Assembly (NCBI RefSeq): GCF_001194135.2
Contig: NC_068990.1
Coordinates: 39,897,182 to 39,934,930 of the forward strand
Direction of reading: 5' to 3'
DNA length: 37,749 bases
Origin: Octopus bimaculoides
Taxonomy: Eukaryota
Shown: positions 9,968-10,764 of the stretch, one piece after another
How the letters are laid out: the number at the start of each line of letters is the position of its first letter
How positions within the stretch are numbered: the stretch's first letter is position 1
Notes under the pieces: model-generated
Told to the model about the DNA's origin: nothing
The model's database searches: none
The model's input: only the letters and a program-made list of their open reading frames with translations
Position numbers and translations under genes: made by a program

Positions 9968-10100
9968 CTGTAGATGAAATCTTAAATAGAGTTTTTAAGG
10001 GGGAAATATTTCAGTGTCATTACCATGCAGATCTTTCAGTTTTCATCAGTCCTGGCCATGAAATTTTTTTTCCCACAAGAGTTCTGGACCGCAGTAATGA

Positions 10101-10125
10101 ACTCATTTGCATACAGCCAATCAGA
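10101..10125 (+). promoter_or_regulatory. octamer (ATTTGCAT) + CCAAT box within left TIR
   Basis: The sequence is ACTC-ATTTGCAT-ACAG-CCAAT-CAG. This is a motif match only; function is untested. Confidence 0.4.
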
Positions 10126-10532
10126 GCTCACCTTGACTTTGTTGTCAAGTTAACAAACACACTCAAGATGAAGAGTGGTGTTGTTAATCGACTGATCATC
10201 AAATTATGCCTGATTTTAGAAGGAGTCAAGTAATTAGGTAGATTTGCATCTATACCCATTATCAGATTATGTTAGGGCCCCATATGGTAAAGATGTAGAT
10301 GGGAAAAAATGTGGGTAGAGAGTGATGTGCTAGCAGCCCTCTCCCCTTACTGCTTTAAAAAGTAAGCAACAACACAAATAACTACGCAGAGGCAGCCATG
10401 TTTGAAACAAGAACAAGATCCACAAGGATTATTAAAAGTGAAAAGAAGCATGGTCATTCCTTACCCAAGTGACCTTACCTTATTTCCCCCCATCACTTTT
10501 TATGTGCTCATGTATTAGTTTGATAGTTGAGC

Positions 10533-10557
10533 TCTGATTGGCTGTATGCAAATGAGT
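10533..10557 (-). promoter_or_regulatory. octamer + CCAAT box within right TIR
   Basis: The plus strand reads CTG-ATTGG-CTGT-ATGCAAAT-GAG, a mirror copy of the left-arm motif pair. Confidence 0.4.
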
Positions 10558-10764
10558 TCATAACCGGGGTCCGGAACTCTTGTGGGAAAAAAACATTTCG
10601 CGTCCTGGCCAGCCACTGCCAATCCTTTTTACCTTCTCTGGGGTTCATCAAAAAAACTTATCAATGCTGAAATACTAAAATATTTATTTAGTATTCAGTA
10701 ATAAGTTCTGCCCCTGACTCTTGAGTATATTCAATGAGTTTTATTTTGTTGTATTTATTTATAC

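What the first reader, a model, noticed from the sequence alone, without database searches (positions are those of the whole stretch)
10049..10610. Foldback element with ~73-bp TIRs and a perfect 9-bp target-site duplication
Seen: the arms 10058-10130 and 10528-10601 are reverse complements, and GTCCTGGCC is repeated exactly on both outer flanks. The left terminus ATGAAA versus right GCGAAA differs only by CpG-type transitions. The ~400-bp interior has no transposase-like ORF but contains small hairpins (TTGAC..GTCAA at 10133-10148; TTAACAA..ACTC/GAGT..TTGTTAA at 10151-10188). Known: 9-bp TSDs with G-starting TIRs typify Mutator-like (MULE) elements, and Merlin has 8-9 bp. Inference: this is a MITE family I do not recognise, possibly uncatalogued. 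Its arms would also pair as RNA if transcribed.
Basis: partly seen in the sequence, partly recalled or inferred. Interest (0 to 1): 0.72.

Follow-up and report, generated by a model that had tools for sequence, protein, structure and literature searches.

The report
Small gene-less DNA transposon copy (MITE)
This is a 544-bp decayed copy of a cut-and-paste transposon with no gene of its own; related copies are abundant in another animal's DNA and insert at a rare GC-rich palindromic 9-bp site, so it is a real but ordinary element whose transposase family is still unknown.

Summary
Arms 10058-10132 and 10525-10601 are inverted repeats, 92% identical over 75 bp with one indel. GTCCTGGCC flanks both ends.

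It is a transposon, not a chance palindrome. Translating the arms and searching them as protein found 51 ORFs from one ENA assembly (ERZ26222911), a different animal with CpG o/e about 0.8 against 0.26 here. All carry the same terminus, GCGAAAT.... Twelve fetched loci hold 11 complete 0.4-2.1 kb gene-less elements. These share only the outer 70-150 bp. Six have perfect 9-bp duplications and one has 8/9, all with different sequences.

The target is a palindrome, GNCC(S)GGNC: C3 and C4 in 15/17 sites, G6 in 14/17, and 82% GC against a 39% background. The window has only one other match to this motif in 37.7 kb.

A 30-bp block in the arm, which contains ATTTGCAT and CCAAT, is identical between the two organisms. 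It is the likely transposase-binding site.

No transposase-bearing copy was found, so the superfamily is inferred. Mutator-like is most likely (9-bp TSD, long G-starting arms, varied interiors). P-like is the main rival, because the P target GTCCGGAC has the same half-sites. Merlin fails its 5'-GG terminus rule. "Foldback" is a misnomer. Repbase and Dfam could not be checked.

The parts
10049..10057 (.). Left copy of the 9-bp target-site duplication, GTCCTGGCC
   Evidence: Exact direct repeat. It fits the family target motif GNCCNGGNC, which has only 3 matches in the whole window; two of them are these TSD copies.
10058..10132 (+). Left terminal inverted repeat. The terminus has decayed from GCGAAAT to ATGAAAT.
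   Evidence: 92% identical to the reverse complement of 10525-10601. 86-89% identical over 70-72 bp to the termini of ENA elements.
10099..10128 (+). Invariant 30-bp block GAACTCATTTGCATACAGCCAATCAGAGCT inside the left arm. It is the inferred transposase-binding site and contains ATTTGCAT and CCAAT.
   Evidence: Identical in both window arms and in the consensus and most ENA termini. Extra subterminal copies of its core occur in L001 element 1.
10133..10524 (.). Non-coding interior (392 bp), unrelated to the interiors of the ENA elements
   Evidence: No ORF of 50 aa or more lies wholly inside the interior: the two listed (57 and 50 aa) start in or run into an arm. No BLASTN similarity to ENA elements beyond the outer 71 bp. 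No other copy in the window. No Rfam hit.
10530..10559 (-). The same invariant 30-bp block in the right arm
10525..10601 (-). Right terminal inverted repeat with an intact terminus (...ATTTCGC, which reads GCGAAAT on the minus strand)
10602..10610 (.). Right copy of the 9-bp target-site duplication, GTCCTGGCC

Best explanation
Window 10058-10601 is a decayed, non-autonomous cut-and-paste DNA transposon (a MITE).

Shown:
- It has 75-bp terminal inverted repeats and a 9-bp target-site duplication.
- It belongs to a family defined by a conserved ~71-bp terminus, GCGAAAT...GAACTCATTTGCATACAGCCAATCAGAGCT.
- Many gene-less elements with unrelated interiors carry that terminus in a second animal genome.
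- The family inserts at a rare GC-rich palindromic 9-bp site, GNCC(S)GGNC.

Inferred:
- A DDE transposase encoded elsewhere binds the invariant 30-bp block in each arm, pairs the ends and excises the element.
- It joins the two 3' ends to target strands 9 bp apart, across a two-fold symmetric target. Gap repair then makes the duplication.
- The transposase is most likely Mutator-like (MULE).
- This copy is probably no longer mobile, because CpG decay changed its left terminus from GCG to ATG and removed CpGs from the left arm.

Confidence that it is a non-autonomous TIR transposon of this family is about 0.93. Confidence that the family is MULE is about 0.45. The score given covers the whole statement.
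For: Anatomy.

Family:
- The arm frames searched as protein returned 13 and then 51 ORFs, all from ENA assembly ERZ26222911.
- Twelve loci hold 11 complete pairs of ends (0.38-2.1 kb) and several single ends.
- There are at least four interior types that share only the outer 70-150 bp.
- The 24 aligned termini have 87% mean column identity.

Target-site duplications:
- Perfect 9-bp TSDs: GTCCTGGCC (window), GGCCGGGGC (L001), GCCCGGGCC (L003), GTGCGGTGT (L004), TCCCCGGAG (L010), GCCCCGGGG (L011).
- One 8/9 case: GGCCTGGAC / GGCCGGGAC (L023).
- L004 shows that the terminus is G, not CG, and that the TSD is 9 bp and not 7.

Target motif:
- 17 sites give C3 15/17, C4 15/17, G6 14/17, and G1 and G7 11/17 each, with binomial P from 2e-9 to 6e-5. 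Site GC is 82% against a 39% background.
- In 16 of 16 ORFs that read into the arm in frame 0, the codon covering TSD positions 4-6 is Pro or Arg, that is C followed by C or G.
- The motif was derived mainly from the other organism, yet the window has only one other match in 37.7 kb.

MULE reading:
- MULEs typically have TIRs over 100 bp and 8-10 bp TSDs, and their non-autonomous members share the TIR but carry heterogeneous interiors (PMC5225508).
- Maize Mu prefers a GC-rich palindrome, CCyCyCnsnGrGrGG, around its 9-bp TSD (bioRxiv 10.64898/2026.05.18.725947).
- That MULE arms start with G is from my own knowledge.
Against: - No copy carrying a transposase was found in about 200 kb of ENA sequence around 12 copies. 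No called gene there has a DNA-transposase Pfam hit.
- The window arm is 75 bp, below the usual MULE length. The ENA arms are about 133-150 bp.
- The target half-sites (GNCC) resemble those of the P element (GTCC) more than those of Mu (CYCN).
- Four of the 11 end pairs have non-matching flanks (L001 element 1, L005, L008, L009).
- No second copy lies in the window, and the source genome could not be searched.
Confidence: 0.5

Rival explanations
1. It is a MITE of the P-element superfamily, comparable to BuT5 and its divergent P element. It would be mobilised by a THAP-domain, GTP-dependent P/THAP9-like transposase that here cuts the target with a 9-bp stagger.
For: - The optimal P-element target is the palindrome ATR-GTCCGGAC-WAT, with the 8-bp TSD GTCCGGAC (PMC2577343). 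The motif here, G[T/G/C]CC-S-GG[N]C, has the same half-sites with one extra central base. The window site is GTCC-T-GGCC and the L023 site is GGCC-T-GGAC.
- P relatives can make 9-bp TSDs: 13 of 17 BuT5 copies, and the D. buzzatii P element (PMC3698922).
- Like BuT5 and its P element, the elements share only their ends.
- L002 3158-3188 has a 13-bp stub made of both termini, lying between two TSD copies. That is what a staggered cut inside the ends would leave; P cuts 17 nt in (PMC7776569).
- New copies sit against the ends of old ones (L001, L011, L002). Linheiro and Bergman noted that P termini restore the target motif after insertion.
Against: - The termini are GCG..., not the CA... seen in P, 1360 and Galileo (from my own knowledge).
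- Arms of 75-150 bp are long for P-like elements, apart from Galileo.
- No THAP or P-transposase gene was seen near any copy.
- The L002 stub can also be read as a 22-bp duplication of the junction.
- A recent repeat annotation of one octopus lists Mutator and Merlin among active TIR families but no P (PMC13282606). This is relevant only if the window comes from a cephalopod, which was not established.
Confidence: 0.2
2. It is a MITE of the Merlin/IS1016 superfamily.
For: Merlin elements make 8- or 9-bp TSDs and have TIRs of 24-462 bp (PMC8101967).
Against: Merlin termini are a conserved 5'-GG-3' (PMC8101967). Here 20 of the 24 aligned termini begin GCG, three begin GCT or ACG, and the window's decayed left arm begins ATG, so none begins GG. 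No IS1595-type DDE gene lies near any copy.
Confidence: 0.05
3. The family belongs to a lineage of DDE transposons that is not yet described, or to a known superfamily with atypical features. The 9-bp TSD and GC-rich palindromic target would then be convergent with MULE and P.
For: - No transposase could be linked to the family.
- The combination of features matches no superfamily description that I could check: a GCG terminus, a strict GNCC(S)GGNC target, a 9-bp TSD, and a 30-bp arm block that is identical between two very different genomes.
- The two most conserved stretches of the arm (positions 48-69 and 13-33) have no true match in the IMG/VR, JGI or GTDB collections.
Against: Every individual feature has precedent in MULE or P. 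The absence from prokaryote- and virus-centred collections says nothing about animal repeat libraries, which were not available.
Confidence: 0.17
4. It is not a mobile element. It would be a local inverted duplication or a chance palindrome, with a coincidental 9-bp flanking repeat.
For: Only one copy lies in the 37.7-kb window.
Against: - The same 71-bp terminus bounds dozens of elements with other flanks and other TSDs in another organism.
- The window site matches the target motif derived from those copies.
- A 9-bp identity arising by chance at fixed positions has a probability of about 4e-6.
Confidence: 0.01

Closest known systems
Non-autonomous Mutator-like elements (for example the Muta1-derived elements of Aedes aegypti, and maize Mu1-type elements)
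   Same: - 8-10 bp (here 9-bp) TSDs and long arms that start with G.
- Many gene-less derivatives that share only the arms and subterminal sequence and carry heterogeneous interiors.
- In maize Mu, a GC-rich palindromic preference around a 9-bp TSD (PMC5225508; bioRxiv 10.64898/2026.05.18.725947).
   Different: - The window arm is only 75 bp.
- There are no short tandem subterminal repeats like those of Muta1. Extra copies of the 20-bp core occur only in some ENA elements.
- The target motif has strong C4/G6 and G1/C9, unlike CYCNSNGRG.
- Muta1 shows no sequence preference in yeast.
- No MULE transposase was linked to the family.
BuT5 and its divergent P element (Drosophila repleta group), together with the canonical P-element target motif
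   Same: - An approximately 1-kb gene-less MITE that shares only its ends with its master element.
- 8- or 9-bp TSDs, mostly 9 bp.
- A GC-rich palindromic target with GTCC/GGAC half-sites (PMC3698922, PMC2577343).
   Different: - BuT5 has 3-bp TIRs plus 16-17-bp sub-TIRs, against 75-150 bp arms here.
- P-type termini start with CA (from my own knowledge).
- The preference here is much stronger than the weak P consensus.
Merlin MITEs
   Same: 8-9 bp TSDs; TIRs can be long (PMC8101967).
   Different: The defining 5'-GG terminus is absent (the terminus here is 5'-GC).
Drosophila Foldback (FB) elements
   Same: 9-bp TSDs (from my own knowledge); the arms can fold back on each other.
   Different: FB arms are long arrays of tandem subrepeats that make up most of the element. 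Here the arms are unique sequence and make up 27% of the element.
IS10/Tn10 (bacterial)
   Same: A 9-bp TSD with a symmetric consensus, NGCTNAGCN (from my own knowledge). It illustrates the same logic: a two-fold symmetric transpososome reads a 9-bp palindromic target.
   Different: It is a prokaryotic IS4-family element, unrelated in sequence and host. This is a mechanistic analogy only.

Membership tests
Non-autonomous TIR transposon / MITE | Terminal inverted repeats | tested here: met
   75 bp at 92% identity
Non-autonomous TIR transposon / MITE | Target-site duplication of fixed length that differs in sequence between copies | tested here: met
   Six perfect 9-bp TSDs plus one 8/9, all with different sequences
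Non-autonomous TIR transposon / MITE | No coding capacity, small size | tested here: met
   544 bp. The longest ORF is 57 aa and is a read-through of the arm. The interior-derived ORFs of ENA copies that were scanned (P0052, P0017, P0031, P0016) have no Pfam hits.
Non-autonomous TIR transposon / MITE | Multiple copies in the same genome | not testable with these tools
   There is only one copy in the window and the source genome is not available. At least 50 copies of the sister family exist in ENA ERZ26222911.
Mutator-like (MULE) | 8-10 bp TSD | tested here: met
   9 bp; criterion from PMC5225508
Mutator-like (MULE) | Long TIRs (typically over 100 bp) | tested here: inconclusive
   75 bp in the window; about 133-150 bp in ENA copies
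Mutator-like (MULE) | An autonomous member encodes a MULE DDE transposase (PF10551/PF00872, often with SWIM) | tested here: inconclusive
   No autonomous copy was found in 12 loci. One ORF fragment that looks MULE/SWIM-like lies at L007 4787-5200. It sits 5 kb from a truncated copy with a LINE in between, and it has no Pfam hit.
Merlin | 8-9 bp TSD | tested here: met
   9 bp
Merlin | Conserved terminal 5'-GG-3' | tested here: not met
   The termini are GCG in 20 of 24 aligned ends, and none begins GG; criterion from PMC8101967
P superfamily | 7-9 bp TSD with a GC-rich palindromic target of the GTCCGGAC type | tested here: met
   A 9-bp TSD, as in BuT5. The motif GNCC(S)GGNC has the same half-sites plus one central base (PMC2577343, PMC3698922).
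P superfamily | Short TIRs with CA... termini | tested here: not met
   Arms of 75-150 bp with GCG termini. The criterion is from my own knowledge; P has a 31-bp TIR and BuT5 a 3-bp TIR (PMC3698922).
P superfamily | Master element encoding a THAP/P transposase | tested here: inconclusive
   None seen in the 12 loci. The collection could not be searched by DNA.
Foldback (FB-type) elements | Arms made of tandem subrepeats that form most of the element | tested here: not met
   The tandem-repeat finder reports no array between 9191 and 11029. The arms make up 150 of 544 bp.

The most novel reading that the evidence does not exclude
The termini define a transposon lineage that no catalogue holds. 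It would have an unusually strict palindromic 9-bp target, GNCC(S)GGNC (P-element half-sites with a one-base-wider stagger). Its arm is about 88% conserved, with a 30-bp block 100% conserved, between two animals whose genomes differ sharply in CpG content. That would point either to horizontal transfer between distant animals or to a very constrained transposase-DNA interface. The transposase might be an intermediate or a new clade among the C/DxxH transposases (MULE, P, hAT).
Probability: 0.15. Interest if true: 0.5.

Novelty: new member of a known kind. Interest (0 to 1): 0.27.

Why it matters
For the window itself the result is routine annotation. It is one dead MITE in repeat-rich, gene-poor sequence, and it should be masked rather than read as a regulatory hairpin.

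The family has some interest for transposon biology:
- Its target preference is far sharper than that of most eukaryotic DNA transposons. The target motif is expected about once per 40-50 kb.
- The preferred site survives insertion and attracts further copies.
- A 30-bp arm block that contains octamer-like and CCAAT motifs is invariant across two very different genomes.

If the transposase were identified and proved active, a cut-and-paste system with a strong 9-bp site preference could be a useful tool. It would also be a clean case for studying how stagger length and half-site reading are set.

Tried and rejected
- Exact DNA scans with the most conserved 22-mer found nothing in IMG/VR, JGI metagenomes or GTDB genomes.
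- A second pattern from the outer arm gave 11 JGI hits. All are chance matches: 46-71% GC contigs with no extension beyond the 21-nt pattern. It gave none in IMG/VR.
- Rfam and ARAGORN found nothing in the window.
- The search for an autonomous copy used all 12 contig look-ups. I chose long contigs and ORFs with unusual interiors (P0031, P0017). Only gene-less elements, LINE fragments and one ASC-channel gene were seen. L011 1-2742 is a right end with at least 2.6 kb of unique interior and no coding signal.
- The ORF in L007 that looks like MULE has no Pfam hit. The last homologue search found only two short relatives. It lies beyond a LINE from a 5'-truncated MITE, so I treat it as unrelated.
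- I considered reading the terminus as CGCG with a 7-bp TSD, which would be P/Galileo-like. I rejected it because the L004 TSD, GTGCGGTGT, ends in T.
- I considered that the flanking 9-mers are part of the element. I rejected this because they differ between copies.
- Pfam scans of ten window ORFs gave nothing usable, so the source organism was not identified. My guess of a cephalopod is unsupported.
- The accession ERZ26222911 appears in no held paper.
- Yuan & Wessler 2011 and Bao et al. 2009 are not held. The TSD and terminus rules for some superfamilies therefore rest on my own knowledge.
It returns no genomic context and could not link a transposase to the termini.

Full report
CONTEXT. 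The window is draft animal genome sequence. It is 34% GC, has CpG observed/expected of 0.26, and has eight N gaps that abut microsatellites. It contains no tRNA or Rfam family. Its ORFs are low-complexity read-throughs plus two mariner-like fragments. I could not identify the organism.

OBSERVATION. The finding is accurate.
- The arms 10058-10132 and 10525-10601 are reverse complements: 69 nt at 93% without gaps, or 75 bp at 92% with one 1-nt indel.
- Probes taken from the arms hit only these two places, against none expected.
- GTCCTGGCC is repeated at 10049-10057 and 10602-10610.
- Four of the six arm-to-arm substitutions are transitions at CpG sites that the right arm retains, including both changes at the left terminus (GCG>ATG). 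This fits a heavily CpG-depleted genome.
- The interior (10133-10524) has no meaningful ORF.
- The whole element folds into one long stem, as any TIR element would.

FINDING RELATIVES. The window holds no second copy. Exact scans of the viral, JGI-metagenome and GTDB collections with the most conserved 22-mer found nothing. What worked was treating the arms as protein.
- Three reading frames are open through the arm. A concatenate of those translations returned 13 ORFs containing KFFFPRQFRTPSTNSFAYSQSEL-type peptides.
- A second query built from the hits returned 51 ORFs.
- All come from one ENA assembly, ERZ26222911, on contigs with 1-10x coverage.
- I fetched twelve loci, L001-L011 and L023. 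They are 35-39% GC with CpG o/e of 0.8-0.9. They carry LINEs and an ASC-type channel gene. This is another animal, with a very different methylation history from the window's.

THE FAMILY. BLASTN of the terminus against the loci, plus an alignment of 24 termini, gives the following picture.
- All the ends start with GCGAAAT or a one-base variant of it (20 of the 24 aligned ends start GCG) and run for about 71 bp that align with the window arms at 84-89% identity.
- Within this stretch, the 30-bp block GAACTCATTTGCATACAGCCAATCAGAGCT is identical in both window arms and in the consensus and most ENA ends.
- ENA arms extend to about 133-150 bp.
- Interiors fall into at least four unrelated types (L001 element 1; L001 element 2/L003/L009/L010; L004/L005/L007/L023; and a 0.38-kb type in L008/L011). 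None resembles the window's interior.
- Arms of several ENA copies are 97-100% identical, so that family was active recently.
- This is the standard picture of non-autonomous elements that share only what a transposase needs.

TARGET-SITE DUPLICATION AND TARGET.
- Perfect 9-bp duplications flank the window copy (GTCCTGGCC), L001 element 2 (GGCCGGGGC), L003 (GCCCGGGCC), L004 (GTGCGGTGT), L010 (TCCCCGGAG) and L011b (GCCCCGGGG). L023 has 8/9 (GGCCTGGAC / GGCCGGGAC).
- L004, whose TSD ends in T, shows that the element begins with G and that the TSD is 9 bp, not 7 bp with a CG terminus.
- Across 17 independent flanks, position 3 is C in 15, position 4 is C in 15, position 6 is G in 14, positions 1 and 7 are G in 11, and position 9 is C in 10. 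Position 5 is C or G in 13. The sites are 82% GC against a 39% background.
- The flank codons of ORFs that read into or out of the arm agree. In all 16 frame-0 ORFs the middle TSD codon is Pro or Arg.
- The consensus GNCC(S)GGNC is its own reverse complement, as expected for a two-fold symmetric transpososome.
- The motif was derived mainly from the other organism, yet the window contains only three matches in 37.7 kb, and two of them are the TSD copies. This is an independent check that the window copy arrived by the same mechanism.

MECHANISM.
- Shown: the family structure, the 9-bp stagger, the target motif and the invariant arm block.
- Inferred: a DDE transposase supplied in trans binds the 30-bp block, of which some ENA elements carry extra subterminal copies. 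It then synapses the ends, excises the element, and integrates it with 9-bp staggered strand transfer at the palindromic site.
- The window copy has lost its left terminal GCG and several arm CpGs, so it is probably immobile.
- The block contains ATTTGCAT and CCAAT, and the ENA arms also contain CGCATGCGCG. Whether these act as a promoter is speculation.

SUPERFAMILY. No transposase could be tied to the termini, so the assignment rests on the features below.
- MULE is the best fit. It typically has TIRs over 100 bp, 8-10 bp TSDs, and derivatives that share TIRs but have heterogeneous interiors (PMC5225508). Maize Mu prefers a GC-rich palindrome around its 9-bp TSD (bioRxiv 10.64898/2026.05.18.725947).
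- P is a serious rival. Its optimal target is ATR-GTCCGGAC-WAT (PMC2577343), which has the same half-sites as here with one base fewer. BuT5 and its P element make 8- or 9-bp TSDs (PMC3698922). The 13-bp stub of both termini between two TSD copies in L002 is what cuts inside the ends would leave; P cuts 17 nt in (PMC7776569). Against P are the GCG termini and the long arms.
- Merlin shares the TSD length but requires 5'-GG termini (PMC8101967), which is not met.
- My estimates are MULE about 0.45, P about 0.2, Merlin about 0.05, and other or undescribed about 0.17. The remainder is uncertainty about the whole frame.

WHAT DOES NOT FIT. Four of the 11 end pairs (L001 element 1, L005, L008, L009) lack matching flanks even though their arms are near-identical. 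Recombination between copies, which is how BuT5 generates inversions (PMC3698922), or joins in a low-coverage assembly could explain this. I could not tell which.

NOVELTY AND SCORE. This is a new member of a known kind. The sharp palindromic target and the cross-genome conservation of the arm are modestly interesting. Whether the family is already in Repbase or Dfam is untested.

Noticed in passing
L001 9740-9748; L011 7290-7686; L002 3158-3188: New copies sit directly against the end of an older copy. In L001, element 2 used the 9 bp that abut the right end of element 1. In L011, element b used a site that overlaps the first base of element c. The preferred site evidently survives insertion and is hit again.
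   Followed up: partly
L002 3158-3188: The sequence reads GGCCGGGAA-GCGAAATTTTAGC-GGCCGGGAA, followed by a full left end. This is a 13-bp stub made of both termini between two TSD copies. It is either an excision footprint that kept terminal nucleotides or a 22-bp duplication of the junction. It is the only such case in the 12 ENA loci.
   Followed up: partly
L001 8572-9739; L005 3320-4792; L008 10143-10526; L009 8035-10176: These four complete end pairs have arms that are 90-100% identical to the family consensus (most 94-100%) but non-matching 9-bp flanks. The cause could be recombination between copies or assembly joins at 1-5x coverage. L009 also carries a roughly 1-kb LINE (zf-RVT) insertion in its interior.
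   Followed up: no
L007 4787-5200 (-): A 137-aa ORF with TNNFAEASMRILK...VCTCSRGITGK. It looks like the catalytic-E region plus the SWIM finger of a Mutator-like transposase. It has no Pfam hit and only two short database relatives (P0053, P0054). It lies 5 kb from a 5'-truncated MITE with a LINE in between, so no link was shown.
   Followed up: partly
window 10099-10128 and 10530-10559; ENA arms about 105-125 bp from the tip: The invariant arm block contains an octamer-like ATTTGCAT and a CCAAT box. The ENA arms add a CGCATGCGCG palindrome further in. These may be promoter-like motifs inside the arms; this was not tested.
   Followed up: no
window 3914-4350, 4655-4805, 5000-5253, 19909-20361, 29543-29709: A repeat family of about 430 bp, possibly SINE-like, with 70-88% identity between copies. 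Some copies lie next to microsatellites and N gaps. ARAGORN finds no tRNA-like head.
   Followed up: no
window 8309-8590 (+) and 17128-17400 (-): ORF fragments with mariner/Tc1-type transposase motifs (for example QDNAQPH...DIAPSDYHLF). They are decayed copies and gave no Pfam hit at E <= 0.1.
   Followed up: partly
window, whole: CpG o/e is 0.26 at 34% GC. There are eight N gaps (10-707 bp), most of them flanked by microsatellites, and a very high load of di-, tri- and tetranucleotide repeats (94 TRF rows). This is typical of a short-read scaffolded assembly of a heavily methylated animal genome.
   Followed up: no
window 35583-35763 vs 36065-36240; 24365-24583 vs 24845-25089: Two local direct repeats (92% over 181 bp and 77% over 248 bp) of unknown nature.
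   Followed up: no
L003 (contig ctg979839_1x_c): The locus repeats a roughly 7-kb unit, so the same element and TSD appear at 6264 and at 13307. The contig is flagged circular. This is probably an assembly representation of a tandem or circularised repeat, so I counted it as one insertion.
   Followed up: no
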